Of a stretch of DNA of 64,000 bases, positions 13,226 to 45,180 are shown in pieces. Numbering within the stretch: position 1 is the first letter of the stretch; each line of letters begins with the position of its first letter. Source of the DNA: Macrostomum lignano (taxonomy: Eukaryota); contig NIVC01003543.1 of NCBI GenBank assembly GCA_002269645.1, positions 28,079 through 92,078 on the forward strand, given 5' to 3'. Position numbers and translations under genes: made by a program. The notes beneath the pieces were generated by a model. The model was not told where the DNA came from. It searched no databases and saw only the letters and a program-made list of their open reading frames with translations.

Positions 13226-13639
13226 ATAATTTTTTTTGTCTTGGCGTTAAAAGGCTTTAATTAAAAAAACTCTACTCTCTAAAAATTCGAACCATCGTCC
13301 CTGCATTTAGCAGTTTAGTCTGTTTACCTCTAGGCTAGCTCTCATGAATTTTAGTCATTACCCCTAAATAGAAAATATTCCCAAGACAGCAAGCATCCCC
13401 CCAGTAGCAAGCATCCCCTAATACTCCTAGCAAGCATCCACCCAGATAGCAAGCATCTGCAGATAGCAAGCATCTTGCAGATAGCAAGCATCTTGCAGAT
13501 AGCAAGCATCTTGCAGATAGCAAGCATACCCCAAATAATGTAGAAGCATCCTTCCAGATAGCAAGCATCCTGCACATAGCAAGAATCCCTAAATAGCAAG
13601 CATCCCTGGATAGAAATAATCCTATACATGTAGCCAAGC

Positions 13640-22080: not shown

Positions 22081-22662
22081 ATTTTGTGTTTTTTAACGTG
22101 TTTTAATAAAAAAAACATTTTTCACCACTAAGATTCGAACCAAGGTCGCTACATTAGCATTCCAGTCTGTTTGCATCCGGCTATCTCTTTTCAAATCGAG
22201 AACATGACTTGTGGCCCTTATAATTCAATACTTATAGCAAGTCGGTTAGAGTAAAAAGTTATGACATAATCAATTTCTCAGTCAGCCAGTATCAGTCTCA
22301 ATTCAAGTTAGCAATATGGTTACGCAATTTCAATGAAGTCTTGTGTGCGTTTCTGTGGCACTGTTTTCACCTTGTTGTGATGCAATCTTTATCACAATCG
22401 TAATTCAGCCAGTCAGTTTTTTCTCTAGCATTCTTACAATGCATTTCAAGTCAAAAATTTGGCTTGACCTTTGCAAAAAAGCATGTTTTTCGAATATTTA
22501 ATCCCTTTAACATTGAGCAATTTCTTAGCCAAGATACATGTACCGTCCCAGGAACATTTCTGATCGAATGGTGCAAGTTTGAAGAAAATCGGTTGAGCCA
22601 TTTTTTCTGAAATCTATCGCATAGCTAGTTAGTTACAGACATTTCATTTTTAGTATATAGGA

Positions 22663-25600
22663 CTAGCAATCTTCGCCCCCCGATGGGGGACATCTGGATA
22701 GAATCTCTGTTCTCTACACGGATCAAAAACACATCCAAATAAAGCCTTCACAAAGACAATAAACAAACTGCTCAAATGAAGAGCAATGCGAAAAGAAAAC
22801 ATCCCAAGACAGCATGCAAGCATCCCCCCCCAGATAGCAAGCATCCCCCCCCCAGATAGCAAGCACCCCCAGATAGCAAGCACCCCCCCATAGCAAGCAT
22901 CCAATTGATAGCAAGTATCTATCCTTAAATAGCAAGCATCCACCAGACAATAAGTATCTAGTGCAACAATTTTCTTAGCTTTATGGTGGCTTCTTTATGA
23001 TTGGCATGACGCTTCTTTTTACGTTTGTAATTGTCTCTTTTATGTTTGACATGGTGGCTCTTTTATGTTTGGCATGGTGGCTCTTTTATGTTTGACATGG
23101 TGGCTCTTTAATGTTTGAAATGGTGGCTCTTTTATGTTTTACATGGTGGGTCTTTAATGTTCGACATGATGGCTCTTTAATGTTTGACATGGTGGCTCTT
23201 TAATGTTTGACCTGGTGGCACTTTACTGTCTGCAATGATGGCTCTTTAATGTTTGACATGGAGTCACGTATACGCTTGACATGGTGACTCGTTAATGTTT
23301 GACATGGTGGCTCTTTAATGTTTTACATGGTGGCTCTTTTATGTTCGACATGGTGGCTCTTTAACGTTCGATATGGTGGCTCTTTAATGTTCGACATGGA
23401 GTCACATATATGTTAGACATGGTGGCTCTTTAATGTTGGACATGGTTGCTTTTTAATGTTCGACATGGTGGCACTTTAATGTCTGAAATGATGGCTCTTT
23501 AATGTTTGACATGGAGTCACGTATACGCTTGACATGGTGACTCGCTAATGTTTGACATGGTGGCTCTTTAACGTTCGACATGGTGGCTCTTTAATGTTAG
23601 ACATGGTGGCTCTTTAATGTTTTACATGGTGGCTCTTTTATGTTCGACATGGTGGCTCTTTAACGTTCGACATGGTGGCTCTTTAATGTTAGACATGGTG
23701 GCTCTTTAATGTTTTACATGGTGGCTCTTTTATGTTCGACATGGTGGCTCTTTAACGTTCGACATGGTGGCTCTTTAATGTTCGACATGGAGTCACATAT
23801 ATGTTGGACATGGTGGCTCTTAAATGTTGGACATGGTGGCTCTTTAATGTTAGACATGGTGGCTCTTTAAATTTTTTTCATGGTGGCTCTTAAATGTTTG
23901 ACATGGTGGCTCTTTATTATTTGACATGGTGGCTCTTTAATGTTTGACATGGTGGTTCTTTATTGTTCGACATGGTGGCTCTTTAATGTTCGACGTGGTG
24001 GCTCTTTAATGTTCGACAAAGTGGCTCCTTTATGTTTGACATGGTGGCTCTTTAATGTTTGACATGGTGGCTCTTTAATGTTTGACATTGTAGCTCTTAA
24101 ATGTTCGACATGGTGGTTCTTTTACGTTTGACATGGTGGCTCTTTAATGTTTGACATTGTAGCTCTTAAATGTTCGACATGGTGGTTCTTTTACGTTTGA
24201 CATGGTGGCTCTTTAATTTTCGACATGTTGGCTCTTTAATGTTCGACGTGGTGGCTCTTTAATGTTCGACAAAGTGGCTCCTTTATGTTTGACATGGTGG
24301 CTCTTTAATTTTCGACATGTTGGCTCTTTTATGTTTGACATGGTAGCTGTTTAATTTTCGACATGTCGGCTCTTTTATGTTTGACATGGTGGCTCTTTAA
24401 TGTTTGATATGGTGGCTCTTTTATGTTTTACATGGTGTGTCTTTAATGTTCGACATGATGGCTCTTTAATGTTTGACATGGTGGCTCTTTAATGTTTGAC
24501 CTGGTGGCACTTTACTGTCTGCAATGATGGCTCTTTAATGTTTGACATGGAGTCACGTATACGCTTGACATGGTGACTCGTTAATGTTTGACATGGTGGC
24601 TCTTTAATGTTTTACATGGTGGCTCTTTTATGTTCGATATGGTGGCTCTTTAACGTTCGATATGGTGGCTCTTTAATGTTCGACTTGGAGTCACATATAT
24701 GTTAGACATGGTGGCTCTTTAATGTTGGACATGGTGGCTTTTTAATGTTCGACATGGTGACACTTTAATGTCTGAAATGATGGCTCTTTAATGTTTGACA
24801 TGGAGTCACGTATACGATTGACATGGTGACTCGTTAATGTTTGACATGGTGGCTCTTTAACGTTCGACATGGTGGCTCTTTAATGTTAGACATGGTGGCT
24901 CTTTAATGTTTTACATGGTGGCTCTTTTATGTTCGACATGGTGGCTCTTTAACGTTCGACATGGTGGCTCTTTAATGTTCGACACGGAGTCACATATATG
25001 TTGGACATGGTGGCTCTTTAATGTTGCATGTTGGACATGGTGGCTCTTTAATGTTAGACATGGTGGCTCTTTAAATCTTTTTCATGGTGGCTCTTAAATG
25101 TTTGACATGGTGGCTCTTTATTATTTGACATGGTGGCTCTTTAATGTTTGACATGGTGGTTCTTTAATGTTCGACATGGTGGCTCTTTAATGTTCGACGT
25201 GGTGGCTCTTTAATGTTCGACAAAGTGGCTCCTTTATGTTTGACATGGTGGCTCTTTAATGTTTGACATGGTGGCTCTTTAATGTTTGACATTGTAGCTC
25301 TTAAATGTTCGACATGGTGGTTCTTTTACGTTTGACATGGTGGCTCTTTAATGTTTGACATTGTAGCTCTTAAATGTTCGACATGGTGGTTCTTTTACGT
25401 TTGACATGGTGGCTCTTTAATTTTCGACATGTTGGCTCTTTTATGTTTGACATGGTAGCTCTTTAATTTTCGACATGTCGGCTCTTTTATGCTTGACATG
25501 GTAGCTCTTTAATGTTCGAAAAGTGGTTCTTTATTGTTAGACATGGTGGCTCTTTTATGTTTGACATGGTGGCTTTTTCACGTTCGACGTGGTGGCTCTT

Positions 25601-26672
25601 TAAAGTTTGACATGGTGGCTTTTTTATGTTTGACATGGTAGCTCTTTAATGTTCGACATGGTGGCTCTTTTAAGTATGACAAAGTGGCTCTTTAATTTTT
25701 GACATGGTGGCTCTTTAATGTTTGACATGGTGGCTCTTTAATGTTCGACATGTCGGTTCTTTTACGTTTGACATGGTGGCTCTTTAATGTTCGACATGGT
25801 GGTTCTTTTACGTTTGACATGGTGGCTCTTTAATGTTCGACATGTCGGTTCTTTTACGTTTGACATGGTGGCTCTTTTATGTTTGACATGGTAGGTCTTT
25901 TATATTCGACATGGTGGCTCTTTAATGTTTGACATGGAGTCACGTATATATGTTTTACATGGAGTCACAAATATGTTTGACATGGTGGCTTTTTAATGCT
26001 TGACATGGTGGCTCGTTTATGTTTGGCATGGTGGCTCTTTAATGTTCGACATAGTGCCACTGATATGTTTGACATTGTGCTTCTTTTATGTTTAGAAGTT
26101 TCATGTTTTCAAGGTGTTTTAATAAAAAAACTATTTTGCACTACTAAGATTCGAACCCAGGTCGCTACATTAGCATTCCAGTCTGTTCGCATCTGGGCTA
26201 TCTCTTTTCAATTGGAGTACATCAATTGTGGCCCTTATAATTCAATTCTTACAGCAAGTCAATTAGAGTAAAAAGTTATGACATAATCAATTTCTCAGTC
26301 AGCCAGTATCAGTTTCAATTCAAGTTAGCAATATTGGTTACGCAATTTAAATCAAGTCGTGTGTGCATTTCTTCGGCACTGTTTTCTACTTGTTGTGATG
26401 CAATCTTTATCAGAATTGAAATTCAGTCAGTCAGGTTTTTTTCTAGCATTCTTACAATGCATTTCAAGTCGAAAATTTTGCTTGACCTTTGCAAAAAAGC
26501 ATGTTTTTCGAATATTTAATCCCTTTAACATTGAGCAATTTCTTAGCCAAGATGCATGTACCGTCCCAGGAAAATTTCTGATCGAATGGTGCAAGTTTGA
26601 AGAAAATCGGTTGAGCCAATTTTTCTAAAATCTATCGCATACCCACAGACAACTCATTTTTAGTATATAGGA
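22663..26672 (-). mobile_element. Non-autonomous Helitron, unit 5 (family A)
   Basis: 5' TCCTATATACT preceded by host A; 3' hairpin + GATTGCTAG. Confidence 0.88.
23040..26090. repeat. 23-bp minisatellite, Helitron unit 5
   Basis: Same monomer; ~1,289-bp internal duplication (rare variant CTTTACTGTCTGCAATGATG at 23221 and 24510). Confidence 0.95.
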
Positions 26673-27422
26673 TATAGGCCTGGCATTACTTGGCATTTAC
26701 TTGGCAAATGCCATAGGCCTAGGCTTGGCCAAGTAACTGATTACTTGGCATTACCTGGAATTTACTTAGCATTAGTTGGCATTTACTTGGCATTACTTGG
26801 CATTAGTTGGCATTAGTTGGCATTAGTTGGCAGACACTTGGCATTAGTTGGCATTAGTTGGCATTAGTTGGCACTTACTTGGCATTACTTGGCAGACACT
26901 TGGCATTAGTTGGCACTTACTTGGCATTAGTTGGCATTAGTTGGCATTAGTTGGCATTTACTTGGCATTAGTTGGCATTAGTTGGCATTTACTTGGCATT
27001 AGTTGGCATTTACTTGGCATTAGTTGGCATTCGTTGGCAGACACTTGGCATTAGTTGGCAATTACTTGGCATTAGTTGGCATTAGTTGGCATTAGTTGGC
27101 ATTTACTTGGCATTAGTTGGCATTTACTTGGCATTAGTTGGCATTTACTTGGCATTAGTTGGCATTAGTTGGCATTAGTTGGCATTTACTTGGCATTAGT
27201 TGGCATTAGTTGGCATTAGTTGGCAGACACTTGGCATTAGTTGGCATTAGTTGGCATTAGTTGGCACTTACTTGGCATTAGTTGGCATTAGTTGGCATTT
27301 ACTTGGCATTTACTTGGCATTAGTTGGCATTAGTTGGCATTTACTTGGCATTTACTTGGCATTAGTTGGCATTTACTTGGCATTTACTTGGCATTTGTTG
27401 GCACTTTGTTGGCATTACTTGG
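26673..27422 (+). repeat. Left TIR, inner part, with 10/11-bp tandem array (TTGGCATTAG / TTGGCATTTAC)
   Basis: TATAGGCCTGGCATTACTTGGC... resumes the TIR where the Helitron array interrupted it; it is the inverse of 34867-35775. Confidence 0.92.
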
Positions 27423-27599
27423 TATCAGATGGTATACACTAGTTTTCAGTTTGCATTGGGTTGGTTCAAAAATGTAAAGTGTAGTAACTATAGGACAAGC
27501 ACAAATAGTATGTCTGTAGTACTATTGTCTCTGATCCTAGTCTTTCTGAGTGTCTTTCAATTTAGATGCTAATGTTAGACTTCTAAAATCCCATAAAAA

Positions 27600-28529
27600 T
27601 TGCAGCTGAACCTCCTACAGACTACACCTACTGTGGACTTACCGCAGCCTGGTCCGCCACTGCCATGTCCTGATGGTTCTGTAATTGTGGTGTTTGCACT
27701 CCCACAAGATCTACCGTTGCGCAGTATATGCCAAAGGCTTTGTGTTTGTACTCGTGGAATGACTGCGTCTTGTGTTCACATTTACCGTCAGCATGGCTAC
27801 AAGCGGTGTGGTAAAGACCGAGTGTCTGTTATTACTTCCATTGAGGAGCCTAAAGTGGCTGTATTTCTACATGGCGTATATGGTGGAGCAATCCATGGCG
27901 AGCACCACCAAAATGGTAAAGAGTGGCTTCGTCGTCTTTCTACACCGTCTCAGACAGTAAATTTACCTCACCAACCTTGCCTTGCTCGTCCGTGCACATC
28001 ACCACACATGCGACGTGTACTTCAACGTTCGCTCACCCAGTTGGCGCTCCGTGGGAATGACCGCGTTCTTCGTATGCTTCATTCTGTGGTTGATCTCTGC
28101 TCAGCTATTCCGTTACAGAACAATGAGCCCAATCATAGCCGTTATAACGAAGAGTTAGTCAATAACCTTGAAGTAAACATCGGCGATCAGGAGCTGGGCG
28201 GCGACGAGCAGGAGCTGGGCGGAGACGAGCAAGAGCTGGGCGGCGACGAGCAGGAGCTGGGCGGCGACGAGCAGGAGCTGGGCGGCGACGAGCAGGAGCT
28301 GGGCGGAGACGAGCAGGAGCTGGGCGGCGACGAGCAGGAGCTGGGCGGAGACGAGCAGGAGCTGGGCGGCGACGAGCAGGAGCTGGGCGTAGACGAGCAG
28401 GAGCTGGGCGTAGACGAGCAGGAGCTGGGCGGAGACGAGCAAGAGTCGGTTGTCCCGATGCAGCTGCGATCGCGGCAAGTAAAATCTCAGATGGTGCTTC
28501 TTAAACGGCGTGTGGGACGAGCAAGATGA
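27600..28529 (+). CDS. Orphan ORF inside the MULE (309-aa open frame; Cys/His-containing N-half, 13x QELGGDE acidic repeat, basic C-terminal tail); true start uncertain
   Basis: Long open frame with ~190 non-repetitive codons in an element whose flanks are AT-rich; 21-bp repeat at ~28185-28445; no recognisable family. Confidence 0.5.
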   Translation: MQLNLLQTTPTVDLPQPGPPLPCPDGSVIVVFALPQDLPLRSICQRLCVCTRGMTASCVHIYRQHGYKRCGKDRVSVITSIEEPKVAVFLHGVYGGAIHGEHHQNGKEWLRRLSTPSQTVNLPHQPCLARPCTSPHMRRVLQRSLTQLALRGNDRVLRMLHSVVDLCSAIPLQNNEPNHSRYNEELVNNLEVNIGDQELGGDEQELGGDEQELGGDEQELGGDEQELGGDEQELGGDEQELGGDEQELGGDEQELGGDEQELGVDEQELGVDEQELGGDEQESVVPMQLRSRQVKSQMVLLKRRVGRAR

Positions 28530-30562
28530 TCTATTTAAAATTTCCATACGGATTCACTTGATCTGTGAAACCCGCACTAGCCGTACTAGAAACAATATGC
28601 ATTGTGGACACAAATGTTTAAGAAACAGTTATCTCATAGACTTTTATAGTGGTTTACGGAAGCAATATCAATATAAGTGAAAGGAACTTATTTCTAAGAC
28701 ACTAAACTAGGATACAAGATGCGATCCATGTCTTCTGTTTGTTTTTCTGATAGAAACGAGACCCAGCAAGCTGTTAGTAGAAATCCATTTGTTAGGTCAA
28801 TACGTATACGTTAGCCACATTTGGAAGAGTAAGTTTTAAAGTGTAATTCTCTCGGGGTGCTCTGCACGCATCCCGACAAAAAATTTCTGGACATAATCAG
28901 CGTACTTTTGGTAATCCATTTTGCGTCTGTAATTTTGTAATTTCTCCATTCCTTGAAATATATTGTCTTAGCTCCTACGTGTTTCCTTTATATCCATAAG
29001 AACCATCTGATTCTTATCGATTTAGTCGATTTAGAGCAACAATAAATTTCGTAATTGACATTTATCTTAATTGACTTTTGGAACATCTCAACTTTCACTA
29101 AATCACCCAGGATTCGCCCCGTTCTGGTCCGTGATATCGCTAGGTGCTGTGCAAATGGTGCAAAAATACGTAGATAGTGAACTTTTAGGCACAGAAATGC
29201 ACTATACAATGCTTTGAGATTTCTACTTTAGAATATCAACTTTGAGATTCCAAATCTCTAAGCCGAGAAAAAGTTAAAAATAGCTCCAACTTTTTTGCCT
29301 CACTGCCTGGCGTCTCCGGAGTTTCGCTATTCGATTTCTCATGCCAAAATCATTGGGAAAGAGTCATTTTGCAAGTGTGCAATCATTTTGAAAAAAATTC
29401 GACTTTTCAAAATCTCAGGTCAACTTACTAAAGTAATCCATGCACATACCAGCCATTCGAGCTCGAGTACATACTCGTAGAACCGCCCGACACCATCCGG
29501 ACCACGCTACATTTTGATTGGGCATGCAAAATGCGTTCGAAAGACGGCAACGCGGTCGCTCAGAACCTATTAGAAGCGCTTCTAGTGGGCTAAAATAGCA
29601 CATTTATTGGGTCTTATATCGATTTTTTATAAGAAATCTGCATTTAGTCTCAATATCCGACTGCCGGACCGCTAGAATAGCACATCAGCCGCATAGCCGC
29701 ATAGTGTCTGCAAGCTGCCAGCGAATACGGCGACACTTTTCATGAAAAGCGAAGCTGCCCAGTTCCTCTGAAGTGCAACAACCCATGCACGGGTGCTCCT
29801 GGCGTGACGAAATTGGGGGGCTACATAGGAAATACTCTGGGAGGCATTAAAAATGGCTAAAATCCTCTTAAATAGATCTTTTAGATCTCTTAGCTGGATT
29901 AAAAAAAAGAAGTACCGGAATATGTTCTGGACACGAATTTGCATCAACGAACGACGCGATAAATGAGCGAAAACGTGTCAAAATATTCTTTTTTAGAAGC
30001 AAATGTACCATTAAAAAATTTTACGTTATAAAACTGTCCAATAACGATTAGACTTTATTGCATAAAAGCTTTTTATTTTGAAAAGCTAAAAAAAGGCCAC
30101 GGTTGTCAAATGCGCATGTAAATGTTCAAGAAACAGTAAAAAAACTTCAAAATGCACAAGACATTACAATGAGACTTGTGCAAAAGAAGTTTTAAAGAAG
30201 ACACAACAGACAAAACGGAGACTGCGTCTGAAAGCTATTTAAATGTCAAAAAGTAGGTACATTTGTCTCACTGTCGCCCATCGCTCCCCTTACCTCCATC
30301 TCGCCCTTCCTCAAATCCTTGCCTTAATCTGCCTTGTTCTTTCCCACAAACCTCGTGTCACTCATTATTTTTCTCTCAGTACTCAGCTCTATTTCGCCAG
30401 CGCCTTCCGTCGCTCTTTTTCTACTCAAGCAGCCTCTTTCGATGTGAGGTAATTTGGGGAAGAGAACAATTTTTTTAACAAACGCAAGAATTTCGGGTAT
30501 CTTCAGATTAACGGCAGAACATATTTTATCGCTTTGAGTTATAAATCCGAACAGTTATTTTC

Positions 30563-33500
30563 TTAGCAGAGGTCCGGGTGGTTAATATGAAAAAATTCCT
30601 TCACTTCATCAAAAGCCTTTCGAGCGTCCGGACGGAAGCGGATTTCCATAGAGACGAAAAAACCGTGACCGAATCGCGATTCTAGGCAGTACGCTCGCAG
30701 ATGATAAAAAGTTTTGCGCAGCTGTGAGGTTGCTTTCCAGGAAGTTGCGACTCCTGTGGATGCACTCTGGGGGGTCATATGATGTTCCATATGCCCCACT
30801 ACAAACCGATGCTGCAGTAAGGCAGACTTGGTTACAATGGAGCAGCTGCACCCGGGACACACTTGCCCCTGGCATTCAGCCGATGTGAAGGCTACAAAAA
30901 GCGGATGATCATTTTCCCAAGGCCGACACTCTTCTGAATTTGCCATTTCTGACGGAAAAGGCGTTTCCATTGGAGCCTTCCTTGGCGGCCTGCGCAGACG
31001 AGAAGGATTTTTGTTTCCACGTGTGTCACCGACACCTGGCCGAAGGTCAATGTGAGTGGCCGTACCTGCATGAAAAGAAAAAATATCCTAAATAGACTTC
31101 GCGACAGTTTTACGGACATGAGCAAATATTCTTTTATTGTCAGGACACTGCCCATTTAACCAGTTTAACCAATGCTAACCGCTTAAAAATTTTAAGTTGT
31201 CCTTAGTTCCCAAAACTGAAAGGAATAATAATTAAGGTGACACAACTCCCAAAGCCTATAGAATCTGTGCCCAAAGCTGCTAAGGGTATAGACTTGACAA
31301 GACTTTGATTTTTCCATCGACTGTTTCGCCCGGCCACATACAATCTTTACTTTTGCTAATATGGGGCCCATTCAAATGAAACAGGCGTATTAAAGAAAAG
31401 AGTATATTTTTAGAACTTAAACACGTTTGTGTACTACTTATAACTTACTTCGCGATGCCAAAAAATGTTTTAGATGAAGACTCTGTTCGTCAGCAGAGAG
31501 CTGATTCCAGTCTTCGTTAGCAACAAGATGTGAGGTCCATCCTCGCTGCAAATTGTAATCCCCAGAGCCGTGAAGTGCGGATTCCTCAGCAGCAAACTCT
31601 AATTTGATACGCGATTTAAACTCTGACAGTGCGTCTGTGACAAGTCTCTGGTGCTCACGAACACGAAACGCTTTCAAATCGCGATTGAGTCGTTCCTGGC
31701 GTTGTTGCCATGCAGAATTTAGGCCGGCTTCAGAAAGGCGAAATCGGGTGGCTTTCTGCTTTAATGTGTCCGCCTTTTTCTGAAATAACGAAAAGGTAGG
31801 AAGTAATGCAGCGTACACTTTACACACAATGTTAGTTATTATCAACCCAATTCGTCTTGCTTCTGTTACATCTTTTAGTACATCATTAAATTTATTTAAT
31901 ACATCTTTTAAAACTTACTACAGAGTGCTAGGTTCATGAAGAGAATGTTACGAGTAATTGAATTATTCAAATAAGTGTCGATGGAGTCTTCACCTTGATA
32001 TACTGGAACATGACGGCGCCTACTGGGCCCTGCGATGGCCACTCATTCTCAATGTCAGACAGCTTCCTATCGAAATAGTCAGAATCTGGCGACTCTAGAA
32101 GACCCATGGGGCCAAAGACGTCCTGGCGCATTGTCTGTACCGCAGAGATACGCTGTTGGCTCGACGTCTGGCATGAAGCAACACTAGCTTTGCGCAGTTG
32201 TTCGTCAAAATTGAACATCAAATGTTCCTTACCGAGGAAATGATAGTGGTCATGAAAGACAGTACGCAAGGAAAAGTCGATTGCGCGGCACTCATCAGAA
32301 ATGAAAATTGGACCACTTTTTCCAGGACTTTGTCGAATTTCCTCCTTTATACGAGCAAAAAATGTAATAAAGGAACTCGTGTCAGCATTTTTTGAGTGAA
32401 GAAGTCCGGGGCCGCAAACCAAGGGGCAATTTCCTTCGTGATTCGCCAACCTTGGGTTTTGAACGGCAATATACGTGAGGTAGCAGGCTTTCATATACGT
32501 TGTATCAACGTGCAATTACAGGCCTTCTGCAATGGCACACTTCAGCATTTGAATTTGCCGATCAAAAAAAACGATGACAGCATTGTTACCCTCGTGGCAG
32601 ACGCGTGACCTGAGAAAACGAGTTGATTTATCCATGTCACGGACTTCGCGGTGTAACTGCGTCTCAATTTTAAGCCATTCATCATCGACAATGTCTACAT
32701 GCAAACTGCTAGAGTCCTCACTTCTGCGCACTTTTTTTCTTATGTATTTCAATTGGTTTACATTACGTAGACCGTCTACTCCTGATCGAATGCGCTTATT
32801 CTGTACACCAAGTTTAACCAGTCTCGCTGCATTACTAACAGCAGACGAGTCAGCACGAACAAAAGGAACATGCAGGTTTGCGTTTGCGTTGCCATGAGGG
32901 AGATTAGTAATATTACTTGGTGTGACTGTCCATTTGTATTGTACAGTGCACGTGTCGTAAACGATAATTTGTGGAACAACTTGACGAAATAAGCGTACCG
33001 TTTTGCGAAAGCCAGGAGCAGCCCGCTGGCTGTAATACTTTTCCTGCATTTCCAATACGACAGCGTCACTTCCAAGGCTTTTACTGGCCAAGCGAAAACC
33101 GCACTTCGCGTTCCCGTTTAATCGCTTGCCATCTTCCGTGTAGAATCGATTGTGGCCGCCAATCATGGTCCATTGCCACCCATCGTTAGCTACTGCTGAT
33201 GTTTTAACAACGTATACAGCATCCTTCTCTGGCTTAAATGGGGCCTGGGACGAACTGCTTCTAAGAATAGCTTTAAGGCACGAAGAAAAGGACCACGTAA
33301 AGTTATCGTCGTTGTTACTGGCGTCATCTGAACAAAAATTCGCAGGAGCAAAGGAGTGCGGGGAGGATTGCGCATCATTCGATTCCGAGTTGTTCGACTC
33401 CTCAGATTGGTGCTCCTCGCCAGCATCTGATTCAGCGCCTGTAGTAGTGAAGGTAGTATCGACAAAAGTAACGGAATTTTTCGAAACATGGGAGCCAGTC

Positions 33501-34408
33501 TGTTTCTGATCTGCCATGACGTCTTCAAAATCGCCCAACATGGAAGAACCCACAGCTTCATCGGTATCGGCGTCTACGTCAACATTGCAGCGGCGTTTAC
33601 GTCGGCAGGTTGCTGCTTCTCTAGCATAATACATTCTTTTGTTACTGGCTTCGGAATTCTTTAGACACAGAATAAATGGATTTGTTGAGGATATTACCAA
33701 GTCATTTTCGCTGAAACCAGGGTTCGTCACTAAGAGACAGAAGTGGTTCGGGCGCCATGTGGAATCTAATTGTATGTCCGAGTTGCACGTCCACATTATA
33801 GTTAGAATCTCACCTTTTGAACTGCTTCTTGGTTCTACGACACAGTTGAGCATCGAGTGTCCAGGCGCTTCAGTAATAGGATGAACGCTTTGAATTTTTC
33901 TTTGAATAACAGAGGCCAGTGCGTAAAGCTCGATGATTTCAGAATAAGACGAATATTTTGAAATATTTAGTATAACACTTAGCAACGAGACCGATGTCTC
34001 ACAGACATCGTTTTGGGGTGCAGCCAAAATTTTATTTCTAATCTGCAAAAGTACGTCGCGATAGTGCGCTGAGTGGAATCCAATTTCCAGAACCGTTCGT
34101 ACTCGTAGTTCACAGACAACTTCTGGTGTAGAATCGCAACCGATTCCATTACAAATCGCGTGGTATAGACAGTTGCCATCTGCATACGTAACAATGGGCA
34201 GAAACTGTCCTTGTAGCGACGCATTCGCTTCTATAGCTTGAAAAGAAAACCTTTCTACTCCAAAAGTTTGTATCAGTTGTACTACTTCCACTGACTTTTG
34301 AGTAGCATAGTTTTTAGGTCTAGATTTGACCACAAGATCTTCCATATCTAAAACAGCTCGCCGAAAAATGGGAGTGCCTGTAGTCAAACCACACAAGAGC
34401 CTATCCAA
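30563..34408 (-). pseudogene. MULE (Mutator-like) DDE transposase with N-terminal vertnin/OTU-like domain; disrupted
   Basis: OTU-like ADGNCLYHAI...ELYALASVIQRKIQSVHP...PNHF; PHGN-containing N-terminal region; MULE core HVDTTY (D1)...GPGLLHSK...FISDECRAI (D2)...HFLGKEHL; C-terminal CPGC...YHLRAYC. In-frame TAA at 32516-32518 and a further break near 31967. The third catalytic residue was not located. Confidence 0.8.
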
Positions 34409-34866
34409 GCTCTTTCGCCAATTAAAACGGTCTCAATGGCCAGTGCAACCAGAGCAAACAAAACGACCTCGCAAGTCGGTGTCATTCAGTCGAATGACGA
34501 AAATTGCTACTGAGTCACATTGAGTGTGTAATTTACAAAGACAATGGCAGCAACTGACAATAGAGTCAGTTACCTTCAGCTGTACACCGCATGCAGTACA
34601 GTCAACTTGCATTATCTGCTGTTCTGTTTAGAACCCATGAAGACCTGAAAAGCAATAGAGCAATTATGTGAAAGAAAGAACCGAAATAAGGAAAAAAAGT
34701 GAGTGCAAAATACAAAAAAAGAAGCCAGAACCAAAACAGCATTAAAATAAACTATACTGAACTAATCTGGAATAGTTAATAGCAAACTCATATAGAATAG
34801 AAAACTCATATAGAATAGATAAAAATAAATGCTACAGCCAAACACAATCTAAGGTCTGAAACAACC

Positions 34867-37516
34867 AATGCCAAGTGTCTGCCAAGTAATGCCAAGTAAA
34901 TGCCAAGTAAATGCCAACTAATGCCAAGTAAATGCCAAGTAAATGCCAACTAATGCCAACTAATGCCAAGTAAATGCCAAGTAAATGCCAACTAATGCCA
35001 ACTAATGCCAACTAATGCCAAGTAAGTGCCAACTAATGCCAAGTGTCTGCCAAGTAATGCCAAGTAAGTGCCAACTAATGCCAACTAATGCCAAGTGTCT
35101 GCCAACTAATGCCAACTAATGCCAAGTAAATGCCAACTAATGCCAACTAATGCCAAGTAAATGCCAACTAATGCCAACTAATGCCAACTAATGCCAAGTA
35201 AATGCCAACTAATGCCAAGTAAATGCCAACTAATGCCAACTAATGCCAAGTAAATGCCAACTAATGCCAACTAATGCCAACTAATGCCAAGTAATTGCCA
35301 ACTAATGCCAAGTGTCTGCCAAGTAATGCCAAGTAAGTGCCAACTAATGCCAACTAATGCCAACTAATGCCAAGTGTCTGCCAACTAATGCCAACTAATG
35401 CCAACTAATGCCAAGTAAATGCCAACTAATGCCAACTAATGCCAAGTAAATGCCAACTAATGCCAACTAATGCCAACTAATGCCAAGTAAATGCCAACTA
35501 ATGCCAACTAATGCCAACTAATGCCAAGTAAGTGCCAACTAATGCCAAGTGTCTGCCAAGTAATGCCAAGTAAGTGCCAACTAATGCCAACTAATGCCAA
35601 CTAATGCCAACTAATGCCAAGTGTCTGCCAACTAATGCCAACTAATGCCAAGTAATGCCAAGTAAATGCCAACTAATGCTAAGTAAATTCCAGGTAATGC
35701 CAAGTAATCAGTTATTTGGCCAGGCCTAGGCCTATGGCATTTGCCAAGTAAATGCCAAGTAATGCCAGGCCTATAACAATCTAATTTTCAAAAAATGAAA
35801 ATATATACTAATAATAGAATCTTCAGTTTGCAATACTCTAAGTTAGTTATTAAATAAGTTTGGAATTTAATTGTAATCATAACAGATAAAAAGCAAAGTA
35901 AGGCACAAAATGCTATAATTGTATAAAACTTTTATATCAGTCTAATTAGAAGGCTATGACAAAAAAGTACATATTGCATTTTGCTATTATTCATTCCAAA
36001 TTTTGTCTAAAAGATATTATAATTAGAAAATATAATAGGCCATCCTTAAAATATTCACTATTGAATATTTGAAAATTGAATTTGTATCAAAGCAATTTGC
36101 TTTAATATTCAAATCATATAGTAAACTTTGTTAAAACATTCAAATATTTTGCAATATTAAATTAGCTTGAAAGTGAGCAAATCATTGAAGTCTAAATTCA
36201 AGAAGTATTCCAATCATTTAGATTGAGTAATTGCTATGACCCTCTAGATCACAATGCCTAGACTATAAGGAGTGCCAAGTTGCTTGGGCACAACCACTAC
36301 CAAAGAGAGGAAGTTTAGACAAGAGGAATATTAGTAGTAAAGTGTATTATATACTTTATAAAGTATATATAAAGTGTAGGCCTATATAAGTTAGAACCAA
36401 GAGAAAGAATAATAGAGAGCCCTAGGGCAAAAATAGACAACAAACTAAGTCTAGTTATCAACTTAAAAGCATTTCCAATTTGCTATTAAATTTATGAGGC
36501 CAATAGACAAAGTGAGAAAGCAAATTTTAATAACCCCCATTAGATTATGGTCCTTTCTTAATTTATTCTTCCTATCCTATTGTCAAATTCTATAAATATA
36601 ATCAATATCATGGTTTTGCTATTCTTGAAACTTCCTTAAAGTAGAGTAGGATAAAGTAAAACAGTAACTCTAATTAGATCATGATCCATTCCTAAATATA
36701 GAAGTGCTTCACAGCCTGCCACAATATAAGAAGAATCTAAAGTGAGTATTCAAAAACCTATCAAAAGCCATCCATAGCAATGCCCAATGGTAGTGACAGA
36801 CAAGGCATGGCCAAAAATAATTGAGTAAACATAGTATTACACTTCTGGTATACAAAGCGTAAATATATAAACTTATAAAGGACAGTTGACATATGGTATT
36901 TGGCATTTCATACTTATACTTTACACAATCTGCTTAATTTTTAATGAATAAATTTAATGTTAACCATAAAAAACTTTGACAGTGAAATTCACTTTGAATT
37001 GAGGCAAAAATATATCGAGCCTCTATTAGAGGTAATTTATTTTCTATACTATGCATCAACTAAAAAACGATGCTTTAATATTAGTTTGCACCTTACGCTA
37101 GCTTAACGGGCTACACAATAACTAAGTGAAATGTAAACGAAAATGCCTGTTAAAAAATGCGAAAGTAAAATACAGTAAAACAAATTACCCATTACCCTAA
37201 CTTTGCTCATACAGGTTAAAACCACTTGATATTATACATTATGGGAGAAGATGTAAAAGTAAGCTTAGCTATTGATTTTCGATTCTCAATGACGGGGGTA
37301 GGGGTCGGGTAGTTTTGGGTAGCTTTTTGGAGTAAAACACTACCAACAAAAATAAACGTGAATTTCATCATAATCTTTCAGTTTTTCACCTAAAAAATTC
37401 CACACTAGAAGCTGCATAGGTTAGGCGCATTTTCTGGACGATTTGAAGCGGGTAGACGCCTAAAATCATCGGGTAGCCTTTTACCCCATTTTTCGGGTAG
37501 TGTTTTACCCCTTACC
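34867..37516 (-). repeat. Right TIR (~2.65 kb, uninterrupted) including 10/11-bp tandem array at ~34870-35690
   Basis: Continuous reverse complement of 26673-27422 plus 3729-5469. Confidence 0.95.
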
Positions 37517-37722: not shown

Positions 37723-38196
37723 TTAGCTATTCATGACTTCATATATTTTAGCTACACCAGTGAGCTCTTTTCTGACTCTTTTTTCATTTGTAGCATATCC
37801 TATCTTGTGTACTTGCTTGTCATTTAAGAGGTATTGACAGAAGTATTTTTTTCTGATCTTTTCAGTTTGTGGACATTCGGTCAAGTAGTGTAGGATATCG
37901 GAACCATTTCTCGCTCCACACAGTTTACATGCTTCTTGGTAGAAAATGTTGGGTGTAATCTTGCATTTCAGTTTTAGGAGGGTAGTTAGGAATTTTTTGT
38001 TTCTAAATGTGCATGGAAAGTAATCTGAAAGGTCGGGCCTGCAGATTTTTTTGTAGAGATAGGCGTTTTTGTAGAGTTTAATATGTTGCTGGTTCTCTAG
38101 CTTTTGGCTAAGTTCTCTTTCTCTGTGTATCTTGAGGTGCTTTTTCACTAGGTATTTCTCGTTATTAAAGCGTGTGAGCAAATTTGAATGGACCAA
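37723..38196 (-). mobile_element. 3' fragment of a non-LTR retrotransposon ORF2 (CR1/L2-like group)
   Basis: C-terminal CCHC-type motif CKLCGARNGSDILHYLTEC with typical upstream LTTLLKLK context; no RT domain present. Confidence 0.65.
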
Positions 38197-41059: not shown

Positions 41060-41531
41060 TTAGTCCCATCACGTGCCTCCTCTGTTGGCCTCCGCATCAT
41101 TCCATTTATTTGCATGCCTTCCATCTATCTTTCTCCCTGCACGGCCCTTGACTGTTTAACGCGGTTTTTTCTATTTAGCTCCCATTCTTGTGGAATTCTA
41201 AGCCCTAATACATGTAATGCTTCAGCTTTCATGACAGATAGCGAGCTCACAATAAGAGCAGGAATCGCTTCACTAATCCATCGCTTTATGGCTGAGTGCT
41301 ATAGAGAATGAAGAAATTCTCAAGATATCCAGGAACTTCAGACAAAGAACAGATACGTGCTGAGACGATTTTATTGTGTGCACAAACAGATCGTTGTCAC
41401 CGTGTGCCACTCAAAAGAAAAAATTGTTTAAACAAGCTCTCAGAAAAGGGAATATAAAAATTTGCAAGACTTGCGATACTCTGTCAGCAGTTGCATTTGG
41501 AACAAAAATCCAACTATCAGAAGCAAGACCA

Positions 41532-42300
41532 ATGCCTCAGGTGCAGTCAGCTCTGCTCCTACTGCTCGCCCTCTGCGCAGCTGTTCGCGGCCAGTGCCGG
41601 TCCTCTTTCGAAGAAGTCAACGCCAGCCTGTGCATCAACAGTGAGTTCACGGAGGTCATCAGTGATAGTTCTATGGGTGAAAGTGCGACAGCTGACCTGC
41701 AATGCTCAGTGCAGTGCAGCATCCGGCAGCGCTGCCAGGCATTCAGCACTGTTCGTGTTCGACAGGTGCAGCAAAGGCGTGAGGAACTGCAGCTGCTCTC
41801 GGACAGGCCGGCTGTTTGTGAAGAGCCAGCCGGGACTGCAGCCAGGCCTGCTGTGTCCGGCTGGTTACGCCCAGGAGCGGTGCGGAGTGAAGTACAAGGC
41901 GTACCCGAGTCCGGGATACTGGTGGGACGCCAGGCAGAGGTGCGAGAATGACAGCGGGCTGGTGATCATGGCGGATGTGGAAGACGCAGCTGAGATGTCC
42001 TTCATTGACAGCCACTTCAATGCCGAGTACTTCAGCCAGTCGAAGTCATTGTGGCTCGGAGGCTTCCAGTCTCCAGCGAGTCCGAAGTCGAAGTTTGGCT
42101 GGCGGTGGGTCAGCTGCAACACCAGCGTGGATAGCAACCTGTGGAGCTCCTATCCGACAGGCCAGCCTGACAACATTCTTGGTGGTGAAGTCACGATTGG
42201 AAGATTTTACGAGTCTCCGGGTCTCAACGACTTTTCTCCTTCTACCCTGTCCTACAAGCCATCAGCCGTGCTGTGCAAGTGCGTGTCACCGTTCGAATGA
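41532..42300 (+). CDS. Secreted PAN/apple + C-type-lectin-like protein, intronless, with one frameshift at ~41740-41755
   Basis: Signal peptide MPQVQSALLLLLALCAAVRG; PAN-like CSVQCSIRQRCQAF in one frame; CTL motifs (WWDARQRC, LWLGG, GWRW, QPDN, VLC) in the next frame; AATAAA at ~42401. Confidence 0.75.
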
Positions 42301-43889: not shown

Positions 43890-44189
43890 CCGCCGATGAC
43901 CTTTTGACCCGGGCAGTTCAGCAACCACAGACAAGCTTAGCAACTAAGAGCAGAACTCAGTACTCAGCAAGGCCTTAATCGTTTTTTAAAAATAAAGCTT
44001 GGAGGTTTTCACTGACTAGTTTGTTTTCTTTAAGAGTCCCTGAGATTTAGAATACAAGCGAGCACCAGATGACTTCATTTTTACTATGACTAGAGAACTG
44101 TTCCTGCTCTGAGCTCTTCTGCTGCCTAATGTACATTCAGTGCTTATTGATTTTTTCATGACTATAAAACCAGGTTTCTAGCAATTAGG

Positions 44190-45010
44190 ATTGTGTGAAT
44201 CAATTCAGATTGTGTGAATCCAGTTCAGTTTGTGTGAATCCGATTCCGACCGTGTGAATCCGATTTAGATTGTGTGATTCCGATTCAGATTTTGTGAATC
44301 CAGTTCAGTTTGTGTGAATCCGATTCCAACCGTGTGAATCCGATTCAGATTGTGTGAATCCTATTCCGATCATGTGATTCCGATAGTGTGAATCAGATTC
44401 AGCTTGTGTGAATCCGATTCCGATCGTGTGAATCCGATTCAGATTGTGTGATTCCGATTCAGATTGTGTGAATCCAGTTCAGTTTGTGTGAATCCGATTC
44501 CGACCGTGTGAATCAGATTCAGCTTTTGTGAATCCGATTCCGATCGTGTGAATCCGATTCAGATTGTGTGATTCCGATGCAGATTGTGTGAATCCAGTTC
44601 AGTTTGTGTGAATCCGATTCCGACCGTGTGAATCCGATTCAGATTGTGTGAATCCGATTCAGATTGTGTGAATCCAATTCGGATTGTGTGAATCCAATTG
44701 AGATGGTGTGAATCTAAATATAGATTGTTTGAATCCAATTCAGATTGTGTGAAACCGATTCAGCTTGTGTGAATCCGATTGAGATGGTGTGAATCTAAAT
44801 ATAGATTGTTTGAATCCAATTCAGATTGTGTGAATCTAATTCAGATTGCGTGAATCTGATTCAGCTCGTGTGAATCCAATACAGATTGTGTGAATCCATA
44901 TCAGATTGTGTAAATTAAATGCAGATTGTGTGAATCCGATTCAGATTGAGTGAATCTATTTTTAGATTGCGTGAACCCGATTCAGATTGTGTGAATCTAA
45001 TTTATATTGT
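44190..45010. repeat. 20-bp minisatellite (TTGTGTGAATCCGATTCAGA)
   Basis: About 40 tandem copies; each contains the TGAATC-C-GATTCA inverted repeat. Confidence 0.95.
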
Positions 45011-45180
45011 GTGAATCGTATTCAGTAAGTTCGAGTTGAATACCGGTTATTGAAATAATATTAGAAATAAAATTTCCAAACCAAAAGCCTTTGCGCTGAT
45101 TTTATTACTTTCTAAAGCAATACTCTGCAAGAGCTGGGGCTGAGTGCCTCAAAACTGAAATTGTCAACTCGCACGCAGCC

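What the first reader, a model, noticed from the sequence alone, without database searches (positions are those of the whole stretch)
33720..34210. Vertnin/OTU-like cysteine protease fused in-frame to a Mutator transposase
Seen: one 630-aa frame carries D-G-N-C (Cys codon 34169-34171), ELRVRTVLE, YALASVIQRKIQSVHP and PNHF (His codon 33743-33745), then an acidic linker and the MULE N-terminal region. Known: these motifs match the OTU-like domain of vertebrate vertnin as I recall it, and plant MULEs carry Ulp1-type proteases (Kaonashi). Inference: a transposase with its own deubiquitinase-like domain and intact catalytic Cys/His, which might counter ubiquitin-based silencing or turnover, and a possible link to the origin of vertnin.
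Basis: partly seen in the sequence, partly recalled or inferred. Interest (0 to 1): 0.8.

Follow-up and report, generated by a model that had tools for sequence, protein, structure and literature searches.

The report
Dead transposon encoding vertnin-like OTU protease
This is a decayed copy of a 9-kb "foldback" Mutator-type jumping gene from the flatworm Macrostomum lignano. Its single large protein joins a chromatin-reading PHD finger and an apparently active OTU (deubiquitinase-type) protease to the transposase. That protease module is the closest detectable relative of the catalytically dead N-terminal domain of the vertebrate gene vertnin.

Summary
The 630-aa minus-strand ORF (32516-34408) carries D-G-N-C (Cys 34169-34171) and P-N-H-F (His 33743-33745).

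- **OTU fold:** the domain models confidently (pLDDT 88.8), and all 50 listed PDB fold matches are OTU deubiquitinases.
- **Vertnin link:** it matches the vertebrate vertnin N-terminus at hhalign E 3e-20.
- **Fusion to a transposase:** this is real and ancestral. 34 of 36 long relatives (flatworm, bivalve, brachiopod, crustacean, tunicate, amphioxus) have PHD/OTU in front of the same DDE transposase, and Asp/Cys/His are intact in 44 of 48.
- **Transposase type:** it is a divergent Mutator-like enzyme (DDE plus CxxH and NNxxESxN motifs). It matches a Pfam-annotated MULE protein, and two relatives have 8-9 bp target-site duplications.
- **Element:** in the window the gene sits in a 9.1-kb element (26673-35775). 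Its 0.75-0.9 kb inverted ends are built from about 66 and 80 copies of a 10-bp repeat. This anatomy is foldback/Rehavkus-like.
- **State of this copy:** it is dead. It has in-frame stops at 34433-35, 32516-18 and 31967-69, a frame change, and no target-site duplication.

OTU-bearing transposons are already known (Helitron, Ginger1, MuDR-6_HM), so this is a new member of a known kind. The vertnin link is the interesting residue.

The parts
26673..35775 (-). Whole foldback-like DNA transposon (9,103 bp); the gene is on the minus strand.
   Evidence: The inverted arms start at identical 22-mers, TATAGGCCTGGCATTACTTGGC, found only at 26673 (+) and 35775 (-). No match is expected by chance. No target-site duplication flanks it.
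26673..27422 (.). Left inverted arm (3' end of the element relative to the gene): a 67-bp unique tip plus about 66 copies of the 10-bp unit ATTAGTTGGC.
   Evidence: TRF 26740-27422, period 10, 65.9 copies. The outer 150 nt is 99% complementary to the right arm (pair I14).
34880..35775 (.). Right inverted arm (5' end relative to the gene): about 80 copies of TGCCAACTAA plus the unique tip.
   Evidence: TRF 34880-35708, period 10, 80.1 copies; inverted pairs I1-I25.
34436..34612 (-). Start codon (34612-34610) and PHD-type zinc finger (C-x2-C-x12-C-x2-C-x4-H-x2-C-x20-C-x2-C).
   Evidence: Translation. tblastn aligns P0002 residue 1 to 34612. The family profile hits PHD fingers that I recall to be H3K4me3 readers: MLL1 PHD3 1.6e-7, Pygopus, DIDO1, BPTF. 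The window copy lacks the Trp found before the His in P0002.
34433..34435 (-). In-frame TGA stop between the PHD finger and the OTU domain (lesion 1).
33701..34264 (-). Vertnin-type OTU cysteine-protease domain. Asp 34180-34178, Cys 34171-34169 and His 33745-33743 are all intact.
33140..33496 (-). Acid-rich, low-complexity linker, not conserved in the family.
   Evidence: No homologue covers it in tblastn of 280 family proteins; sequence.
32519..33139 (-). N-terminal transposase region (presumed DNA-binding domain; motifs YY..., EY.G, pHGN, yvRt).
   Evidence: Matches positions 115-283 of the family transposase profile; covered by homologues.
32516..32518 (-). In-frame TAA stop inside a conserved block, three codons before the first catalytic Asp codon (lesion 2).
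   Evidence: The alignment runs through the stop.
31970..32515 (-). DDE core, first part: D1 (HVDTTY, Asp 32506-32504), D2 (ISDEC, Asp 32296-32294), and a CxxH motif degraded to GKEH.
   Evidence: Family profile E 1.6e-19 to 1.6e-22, profile positions 292-448; conserved columns.
31441..31969 (-). TGA at 31969-31967 and a frame change (lesion 3). The C-terminal transposase part follows in another frame (31441-31845) and keeps the catalytic-Glu motif W-QQRQERLN (Glu about 31695-31693).
   Evidence: Three-frame translation; profile positions 457-566, E 9e-8 to 1.6e-10.
28184..28445 (.). 21-bp minisatellite (12.5 copies) between the end of the transposase gene and the 3' inverted arm.
   Evidence: TRF. 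The position matches the 'minisatellite prior to the 3' TIR' described for Rehavkus elements (PMC6446971).

Best explanation
The locus is a non-autonomous, decayed copy of a cut-and-paste DNA transposon of the Mutator superfamily (foldback/Rehavkus-like anatomy) in Macrostomum lignano.

Shown:
- The ancestral element encoded one protein of about 1,000 aa with the order PHD finger, vertnin-type OTU cysteine protease, acidic linker, DNA-binding region, DDE catalytic core (with CxxH and NNxxESxN motifs), C-terminal domain.
- This architecture is conserved across bilaterian phyla, with the OTU Asp/Cys/His triad retained.
- Relatives are bounded by inverted ends that contain about 10-bp tandem repeats and are flanked by 8-9 bp target-site duplications.
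- The window copy has three stop codons, a frame change and no duplication, so it cannot make a transposase.

Inferred mechanism:
- The transposase binds the reiterated 10-bp units in both arms, excises the element and reinserts it with a 9-bp staggered cut.
- The N-terminal PHD+OTU module acts as a chromatin-directed isopeptidase. It would remove ubiquitin or a ubiquitin-like modifier from the transposase itself, from histones, or from repair factors at the donor or target site, which would favour transposition or transposase stability. I put about 50% on this deubiquitinase role.
- The main alternative for the protease is cis-cleavage of the polyprotein at the linker.

The vertebrate vertnin N-terminal domain is a catalytically dead homologue of this module.
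For: - Source genome: the window is contig NIVC01003543.1 of assembly GCA_002269645.1, the M. lignano Mlig_3_7 assembly.
- OTU identity: profile against PDB gives OTUD1 3.5e-6 / 2e-8. The AF2 model has pLDDT 88.8, and all 50 listed Foldseek PDB hits are OTU domains.
- Triad conservation: Asp+Cys+His intact in 44 of 48 transposase-linked representatives; Cys 49/49, His 57/58.
- Fusion: P0002 aligns collinearly from the PHD through the OTU and in the core (z = 15.8 against shuffles). An exhaustive phmmer search finds 4,534 relatives, and 34 of 36 representatives of at least 850 aa have OTU plus transposase. Named examples come from Pinctada, Styela (3 paralogues), Branchiostoma, Lingula and Oratosquilla.
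- Transposase: the family profile, built without the window, hits the window's joined ORF at 1.4e-33 and its C-terminal ORF at 9e-8. It also hits the independently Pfam-annotated MULE+FLYWCH protein P0006 at 3.9e-7 across D2..E. The conserved D776/D852/E969 and C873..H876 columns are.
- Mobility: the L002 element has perfect 24-bp termini with an 8-bp TSD, ATATCCTC. L003 has a 9-bp TSD, CAGACCCAG, and ends made of 5 copies of CCGACAAGAG.
- Window ends.
- Lesions.
- Precedents: foldback/Mutator and Rehavkus descriptions (PMC3169594; PMC6446971; bioRxiv 10.1101/2024.12.02.626372).
Against: - No target-site duplication flanks the window copy, so its exact termini and its history (transposition, or rearrangement between copies) are unproven.
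- No Repbase sequences (Rehavkus, MuDR-6_HM) could be compared, so the subgroup is assigned from anatomy only.
- The link to Pfam MULE rests on one annotated protein and a moderate E-value.
- 8-bp duplications and CxxH motifs also occur in hAT and P elements.
- The transposase structure model failed (pLDDT 34.8).
- No biochemical evidence exists for any activity of this OTU subfamily.
- The third triad residue is assigned by analogy with OTUD5, from my own knowledge.
- The window's PHD finger has lost the cage Trp, and its CxxH has lost the Cys.
Confidence: 0.8

Rival explanations
1. The OTU domain is a processing protease. Like the OTU/papain-like proteases of tymoviruses and arteriviruses, it would cut the polyprotein in cis within the acidic linker, releasing a PHD-OTU protein and a separate transposase. 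It would not act mainly as a deubiquitinase.
For: A long, non-conserved linker separates the two halves in every member. Babu et al. 2006 proposed exactly this for OTU-superfamily fusions on Medicago MULEs (PMC1702500). The conserved triad is compatible with either role.
Against: No conserved cleavage motif (for example a Gly-Gly-like site) was seen in the linker, which is not alignable between members. All structural neighbours are isopeptidases. The adjacent PHD finger suggests a chromatin substrate. The two roles are not mutually exclusive.
Confidence: 0.25
2. The 630-aa ORF is a host gene (a flatworm vertnin-like or OTU gene, or a domesticated remnant) rather than part of a transposon. The open frame would then be kept by selection.
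For: 630 codons remain open while the flanking parts of the gene are broken. NCBI's annotation calls a 609-aa product. The catalytic residues are intact.
Against: The ORF is collinear with full-length transposases on both sides, across the stops. It lies between 0.75-0.9 kb inverted arms. It includes 250 aa of transposase N-terminus that would be useless without the core. The outer arms are 99% identical, which suggests a young copy in which a long open frame is expected without selection.
Confidence: 0.07
3. The protease is captured host sequence (Pack-MULE-style gene capture) peculiar to some copies, not an integral part of the transposase.
For: MULEs are known for capturing host fragments (PMC6446971). 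The same OTU subfamily also occurs on Helitrons in rotifers (P0003 has PF14214 plus PF02338).
Against: The fusion has the same order, sits in a single ORF, and appears in 34 of 36 long representatives from many phyla. The transposase-linked OTUs form their own sub-profile: the window scores 125 bits against it and 58 bits against the rotifer type. The catalytic residues are conserved. An ancient single capture followed by retention would amount to 'integral domain'.
Confidence: 0.05
4. The transposase belongs to another CxxH-type superfamily (hAT, P, Kolobok) and only resembles Mutator.
For: An 8-bp TSD in L002 fits hAT or P. Pfam MULE is not recorded for P0002 itself. Similarity to P0006's MULE domain is modest (BLASTP E 0.09; profile 3.9e-7).
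Against: A 9-bp TSD in L003. The W-x-NN-x-x-ES-x-N glutamate motif and the D1-D2 (76 aa) and D2-E (117 aa) spacing are what I recall for Mutator elements; that comparison was not run. No solved hAT or P transposase appears among the 60 PDB profile hits listed of 116. Long ends with tandem repeats and a PHD finger match Rehavkus, which is grouped with MULEs (PMC6446971).
Confidence: 0.08

Closest known systems
Rehavkus elements (Repbase; a MULE-related group, e.g. Rehavkus-1_HR, Rehavkus-1_TC)
   Same: Single ORF with a PHD finger. 9-bp TSD (seen here in relatives L002 and L003). Long inverted ends carrying a variable number of tandem repeats (foldback-like). A minisatellite before the 3' end. 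DDE core grouped with Mutator (PMC6446971; bioRxiv 10.1101/2024.12.02.626372).
   Different: The papers read do not report an OTU domain for Rehavkus. Their host range is given as arthropods and annelids, whereas this family is also in flatworm, molluscs, brachiopod, tunicate and amphioxus. No Rehavkus sequence was available, so homology is untested.
MuDR-6_HM (Hydra magnipapillata MULE listed with an 'Ovarian Tumour Gene' motif) and the Medicago MULEs with a C-terminal OTU-superfamily protease
   Same: A Mutator-superfamily transposase combined with an OTU-type cysteine protease (PMC6446971 Table 1; PMC1702500).
   Different: The Medicago fusion is C-terminal, whereas here the protease is N-terminal and preceded by a PHD finger. 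MuDR-6_HM is listed without TIRs or a zinc finger.
Phantom MULEs and Mutator/Foldback elements (Tm1 of Meloidogyne)
   Same: Animal MULEs with composite inverted ends of tandem repeats and 9-bp TSDs (PMC3169594). P0006, a FLYWCH+MULE (Phantom-type) protein, carries the same vertnin-type OTU at its N-terminus.
   Different: The window's family lacks a recognisable FLYWCH/WRKY zinc finger: only one conserved Cys and one conserved His lie in the DNA-binding region. It matches P0006's core only weakly.
OTU/Ulp1 proteases on other transposons (Helitrons, Ginger1; Ulp1 on Kaonashi and other MULEs)
   Same: A ubiquitin/UBL-type cysteine protease fused to a transposition enzyme. The same OTU subfamily sits on a rotifer Helitron protein (P0003). 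A role in ubiquitin-dependent steps of transposition has been proposed (PMC2836005).
   Different: The transposition enzyme differs (Rep/helicase, retroviral-type integrase). Ulp1 is a different protease fold family. The window's OTU scores much better with the MULE-linked sub-profile than with the rotifer type.
Vertebrate vertnin (VRTN)
   Same: The roughly 240-aa N-terminal module is homologous: hhalign E 3.4e-20, BLASTP to the window ORF 7e-12 at 30% identity. Shared motifs are ELRxRT, YALASV..R.I.S.YP and IMW.
   Different: VRTN has lost the catalytic Cys (GEGS/GEGN-L) and the PNHF His. It is classed as an inactive OTU (PMC10318531). It continues into HTH repeats rather than a transposase, with no similarity to the transposase profile, and it is a single-copy host gene.

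Membership tests
OTU cysteine protease superfamily (Pfam PF02338 clan) | OTU fold (papain-like alpha+beta core) | tested here: met
   AF2 model pLDDT 88.8, pTM 0.85. All 50 listed Foldseek PDB hits are OTU domains, E down to 3e-6, TM about 0.5-0.65.
OTU cysteine protease superfamily (Pfam PF02338 clan) | Sequence-profile similarity to bona fide OTUs | tested here: met
   Profile against PDB: OTUD1 3.5e-6 and 2e-8. Many homologues carry precomputed PF02338.
OTU cysteine protease superfamily (Pfam PF02338 clan) | Catalytic Cys (D-G-x-C box) and His box present | tested here: met
   DGNC with Cys 34169-71 and PNHF with His 33743-45. These are conserved in 44 of 48 transposase-linked relatives.
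OTU cysteine protease superfamily (Pfam PF02338 clan) | Isopeptidase or protease activity | not testable with these tools
   Needs probe or cleavage assays on an intact family member.
Vertnin-type OTU subfamily | Specific similarity to vertebrate VRTN N-terminus beyond generic OTU similarity | tested here: met
   hhalign probability 99.3%, E 3.4e-20. The VRTN profile against solved OTUs reaches only E 0.15. UniRef names homologues 'Vertnin'. Caveat: the VRTN sequences came from a machine-read PDF (PMC3024977 supplement S9) and contain reading errors.
Mutator superfamily (MULE, Pfam PF10551) | DDE triad with a CxxH motif after D2 and an NNxxESxN glutamate motif | tested here: met
   Family columns D776, D852, E969, C873..H876. 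The window keeps D1, D2, E and the His, but has CxxH as GxxH.
Mutator superfamily (MULE, Pfam PF10551) | Detectable homology to a Pfam-defined MULE domain | tested here: inconclusive
   The family profile hits P0006 (PF10551 recorded) at 3.9e-7 over D2..E. This rests on one reference protein. The Pfam HMM itself was not available, and P0002 has no Pfam hit on record.
Mutator superfamily (MULE, Pfam PF10551) | Target-site duplication of about 9 bp (8-11) | tested here: met
   Relatives: 8 bp in L002 and 9 bp in L003. Not met for the window copy itself, which has no TSD.
Mutator superfamily (MULE, Pfam PF10551) | WRKY-GCM1/FLYWCH or SWIM zinc finger in the transposase | tested here: not met
   The conserved columns of the N-terminal region show only one Cys and one His. 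FLYWCH is recorded only for the more distant P0006. This feature is common in MULEs but not universal (Table 1 of PMC6446971).
Rehavkus group | PHD finger in the transposase | tested here: met
   C4HC3 pattern at 34436-34612. The family profile hits PHD fingers at 1.6e-7. 12 of the 34 OTU-bearing long representatives fit a strict PHD regex.
Rehavkus group | Long inverted ends with subterminal tandem repeats, plus a minisatellite before the 3' end | tested here: met
   750- and 896-bp arms of a 10-bp repeat, and a 21-bp minisatellite at 28184-28445.
Rehavkus group | Sequence homology of the transposase to Repbase Rehavkus consensus proteins | not testable with these tools

The most novel reading that the evidence does not exclude
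Vertebrate vertnin arose by domestication of the N-terminal (pre-OTU helices plus OTU) module of this PHD-OTU-Mutator transposon family, which is still present and multicopy in tunicates and amphioxus, followed by loss of the catalytic Cys and His. Conversely, the transposon-borne module would be an active, chromatin-targeted deubiquitinase that the transposon needs. My evidence shows:
- VRTN matches the transposase-linked OTU sub-profile far better than the rotifer/Helitron-type one (73-92 against 25-43 bits).
- VRTN is barely recognisable against cellular OTUs (E 0.15).
The direction of transfer and the identity of the donor element are not shown.
Probability: 0.4. Interest if true: 0.6.

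Novelty: new member of a known kind. Interest (0 to 1): 0.45.

Why it matters
- **Accessory protease is selected, not a passenger:** this defines a large, phylum-spanning and so far unnamed ('uncharacterized protein') group of animal Mutator/Rehavkus-like transposases. They carry a conserved, apparently active PHD+OTU module. That argues that ubiquitin-type deconjugation is a selected part of transposition, and it extends what was proposed for Ulp1 on plant MULEs and OTU on Helitrons and Ginger1.
- **Bridge to vertnin:** the family links the enigmatic vertebrate gene vertnin (pig vertebral-number QTL; zebrafish work cited from memory) to the OTU fold and to a plausible transposon origin. Phylogeny can test this directly.
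- **Annotation hygiene:** 'Vertnin' labels on invertebrate proteins in UniRef are mostly transposon fragments.
- **The window copy itself** is a dead element of no functional consequence.

Tried and rejected
1. NCBIfam scan of both ORFs: no hits. That library covers prokaryotic families.
2. Single-sequence PDB search of the 630-aa ORF: only a marginal OTUD1 hit (E 0.42) and a spurious AcrIIA6 hit. Profiles were needed.
3. MAFFT alignment of the two window fragments with P0002/P0004 (A4) misplaced the fragments. I replaced it with local Smith-Waterman plus shuffles and an HMM built from 65 relatives.
4. AF2 on the P0002 transposase with that shallow alignment gave pLDDT 34.8, which is unusable, so no fold search was run on it.
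5. Search for a TSD at the window element's ends with 0-4 bp offsets: none. TATA at the tips is palindromic and cannot be separated from the inverted repeat.
6. A shared 'GCCRAC' core between the window's 10-bp unit and the CCGACAAGAG unit of L002/L003. I rejected it because the core points the opposite way relative to the termini.
7. VRTN-type HTH motif (STYYxWK) in 280 family proteins: none. VRTN residues 240-400 against the transposase profiles: no significant score.
8. No inverted ends were found on the 4.3-kb contig of P0006.
9. No second copy of the gene or of the terminal 22-mer in the window.
10. Literature searches for VRTN plus transposon/domestication, and for OTU plus MuDR/MULE in animals, found nothing beyond the papers cited.
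Full report
**1. Observation**

The window is contig NIVC01003543.1 of assembly GCA_002269645.1. This is the Macrostomum lignano Mlig_3_7 genome (PMC10733133).

The minus strand carries a 630-aa ORF at 32516-34408.
- D-G-N-C, with Asp at 34180-34178 and Cys at 34171-34169;
- ELRVRTVLE and YALASVIQRKIQSVHP;
- P-N-H-F, with His at 33745-33743.

An acid-rich stretch follows, and then a region that aligns with transposases.

**2. The gene is longer than the ORF, and it is broken**

Translating the same frame beyond the ORF shows three things.
- Upstream, a start codon at 34612 and a perfect C4HC3 PHD pattern (34436-34612) are cut off from the OTU part by a TGA at 34433-34435.
- Downstream, the ORF ends at a TAA (32516-32518), and the frame goes straight on for 182 aa (31970-32515). 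This stretch contains HVDTTY and ISDEC...GKEHL.
- After a TGA at 31967-31969 the reading frame changes. A 135-aa ORF (31441-31845) then carries the rest.

tblastn of 280 relatives covers 33497-34624, 31994-33139 and 31441-31809. It covers nothing else between the inverted arms.

**3. The OTU domain**

- Alone, the ORF gives only a marginal hit to OTUD1 (E 0.42).
- A profile of five related domains (A2) gives OTUD1 at 3.5e-6, then VCPIP1, nairovirus vOTUs, OTUD5, Cezanne and A20.
- The same profile finds 338 database proteins. Many carry Pfam PF02338 and many are named 'Vertnin' by UniRef. Those that carry a name are mostly from bdelloid rotifers, plus one pearl-oyster protein.
- An AlphaFold2 model built on 73 sequences is confident (pLDDT 88.8, pTM 0.85). 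All 50 listed Foldseek PDB matches are OTU domains.
- Across cluster representatives that also contain the transposase, Cys is present in 49 of 49 and His in 57 of 58. Asp+Cys+His are together intact in 44 of 48.

The protease is therefore conserved as if it were active. Assigning the Asp of DGNC as the third triad residue follows OTUD5 and rests on my own knowledge.

**4. The vertnin resemblance**

I took vertebrate VRTN N-terminal sequences from the machine-read alignment in supplement S9 of Mikawa et al. 2011 (PMC3024977). They contain reading errors.
- The transposon OTU profile against these sequences gives hhalign probability 99.3%, E 3.4e-20 over 162 columns.
- BLASTP between the window ORF and one VRTN sequence gives 7e-12, 30% identity over 235 aa.
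- VRTN has Ser or Asn-Leu in place of the Cys box and lacks the His. This agrees with its published classification as an inactive OTU homologue (PMC10318531).
- A VRTN profile barely detects solved OTU structures (best E 0.15). The transposon family is thus the bridge between VRTN and the OTU fold.
- Sub-profiles built without the window or VRTN show which subtype each belongs to. The window's domain scores 125 bits with transposase-linked OTUs and 58 bits with the rotifer (Helitron-type) set. VRTN scores 73-92 against 25-43 bits.
- VRTN residues 240-400 (HTH repeats) have no counterpart in the family.

**5. The fusion is ancestral and widespread**

- P0002 is a 1,102-aa intact relative from a eukaryotic ENA assembly. 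It aligns collinearly with the window from its first residue (the PHD) through the OTU. It aligns again across the catalytic core, with a local score 15.8 standard deviations above shuffles and the alignment running straight through the window's TAA.
- An exhaustive phmmer search with P0002 finds 4,534 cluster representatives at E up to 1e-3, and 429 at E up to 1e-30.
- Of 36 representatives of at least 850 aa, 34 have the OTU domain N-terminal to the transposase. Twelve of those 34 fit a strict PHD regular expression.
- The 30-sequence full-length alignment has the catalytic Cys and His invariant.
- All named members are 'uncharacterized' or 'hypothetical' proteins. They come from Pinctada imbricata, Styela clava (three 987-aa paralogues at different loci), Branchiostoma, Lingula anatina and Oratosquilla oratoria.
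- A more distant protein, P0006, combines the same OTU type with Pfam FLYWCH and MULE domains.
- A rotifer protein, P0003, combines it with Helitron domains.

**6. The transposase**

I built a 607-position profile from 65 relatives, excluding the window and P0006. With Z set to 1e6 it gives these matches:

| Target | E-value | Profile positions |
|---|---|---|
| Window's joined ORF | 1.4e-33 | 115-447 |
| 135-aa ORF (31441-31845) | 9e-8 | 457-566 |
| P0006 (Pfam-annotated MULE), from D2 to the Glu motif | 3.9e-7 | 337-515 |

- The 135-aa ORF match includes W-tNNncESlNhvlK, which is W-QQRQERLN in the window.
- Conserved columns define D776, D852 and E969, with C873-x2-H876 after D2. D1-D2 is 76 aa and D2-E is 117 aa. 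This is the Mutator-type signature as I recall it.
- The full-length profile also detects PHD fingers that I recall to be H3K4me3 readers (MLL1 PHD3 1.6e-7, Pygopus, DIDO1, BPTF). No solved transposase appears among the 60 hits listed.
- A structure model of the transposase failed for lack of usable alignment depth (pLDDT 34.8).

**7. Element anatomy**

The gene lies between inverted arms at 26673-27422 and 34880-35775.
- Each arm has a unique tip, TATAGGCCTGGCATTAC..., which occurs only twice in the window.
- Inside each tip are about 66 (left arm) and about 80 (right arm) copies of a 10-bp unit.
- The outer 150 nt of the arms are 99% complementary.
- A 21-bp minisatellite (28184-28445) lies between the end of the gene and the 3' arm.
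- No target-site duplication flanks the arms.

The relatives do show the marks of transposition.
- In L002 the P0002 gene lies between perfect 24-bp termini (GGTCTCCCTAATTACCGACAAGAA). These carry subterminal CCGACAAGA repeats and an 8-bp duplication, ATATCCTC.
- In L003 the ends contain five tandem CCGACAAGAG units and are flanked by a 9-bp duplication, CAGACCCAG.

Four traits together match published descriptions of Rehavkus: tandem repeats in long inverted ends, an 8-9 bp duplication, a PHD finger, and a minisatellite before the 3' end. Rehavkus is a Repbase-only group treated as a MULE relative and as a foldback element (PMC6446971; bioRxiv 10.1101/2024.12.02.626372). The traits also match Mutator/Foldback elements such as Tm1 (PMC3169594).

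**8. How it most likely works**

Shown: the domain order, conservation of the catalytic residues, the inverted repeat arrays, the duplications in relatives, and the lesions in this copy.

Inferred:
- The transposase recognises the reiterated 10-bp units. The Tribolium preprint cites Liu and Wessler 2017 for more repeats strengthening transposase binding and excision in foldback elements; I did not read that paper.
- It then performs cut-and-paste with a 9-bp stagger.
- The PHD+OTU module most plausibly acts as a chromatin-directed isopeptidase. It would strip ubiquitin or a related modifier from the transposase, from histones or from repair factors, as speculated for OTU and Ulp1 on Ginger1 and MULEs (PMC2836005).
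- A cis-processing role, as suggested for Medicago MULE-OTU fusions (PMC1702500), is the main rival. The two roles could coexist.

The window copy cannot do any of this. It has three stops and a frame change, its CxxH has lost the Cys, and its PHD has lost the cage Trp.

**9. Novelty**

Already published:
- cysteine proteases of the ubiquitin/UBL type on transposons: Ulp1 on MULEs, OTU on Helitrons and Ginger1;
- OTU on a Hydra MULE (MuDR-6_HM) and on Medicago MULEs;
- VRTN as an inactive OTU.

Not found in the searchable literature:
- a description of this PHD-OTU-transposase family and its breadth;
- the fact that VRTN's N-terminal module is specifically related to it.

I therefore file the window feature as a new (and dead) member of a known kind. 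The VRTN-origin hypothesis is the part worth following up. Interest 0.45.

Noticed in passing
window 5734-7178, 8096-10089, 19824-26093: Very large arrays of a 23-bp satellite (CTTTTATGTTTGACATGGTGGCT), all in the same orientation. The last array ends 580 bp from the transposon's left arm. Further arrays lie at 12178-13235 (23 bp), 13640-18397 (48/359 bp), 44189-45025, 45686-46366, 51930-52637, 53231-54242 and 63012-63482. Given the Rehavkus-satellite link reported in Tribolium, some could be transposon-derived. I did not test this.
   Followed up: partly
window 51014-51859 (-): The ORF matches DNA polymerase epsilon subunit 2 (PDB 5vbn, E 4.6e-29). It is a host-gene exon, interrupted by a 14-bp tandem repeat at 51192-51463 that is translated as a Pro/Ser-rich repeat.
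   Followed up: partly
window 27600-28529 (+): A 309-aa ORF inside the transposon, on the opposite strand to the transposase. It ends in a (DEQELGG)n repeat encoded by the 21-bp minisatellite. No family protein matches it. It could be a second gene, a captured fragment or a chance ORF.
   Followed up: no
window 41491-42300 (+) and 37723-38196 (-): By eye, the first ORF ends in a C-type-lectin-like motif set (WLGG...WRW...QPDN), and the second resembles the C-terminal zinc knuckle of a non-LTR retrotransposon ORF2. The first has no PDB sequence hit. The second was not tested.
   Followed up: partly
L003 660-2832 and 3583-5372; L002 14729-18592: The unknown ENA eukaryote that hosts P0002 and P0004 has other small foldback-like pairs whose arms are tandem repeats: GTCAACTCGTACC and AGTCAAAACGTCCCC. 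A full-length non-LTR retrotransposon ORF (Exo_endo_phos + RVT_1 + RNase_H) lies next to the P0002 element.
   Followed up: no
database hits P0033, P0036, P0054: Short proteins pair the vertnin-type OTU with Pfam PF00628 (PHD) and a Pfam family, PF27108, whose name I do not know. Many invertebrate fragments are auto-named 'Vertnin' in UniRef although they are probably transposon pieces.
   Followed up: no
P0002/P0004/P0005 linker region: In the intact relatives the linker between the OTU and the transposase is itself a protein-level tandem repeat (SVSDSAGTA / TAKHATVSG units). Its copy number differs between paralogues.
   Followed up: no
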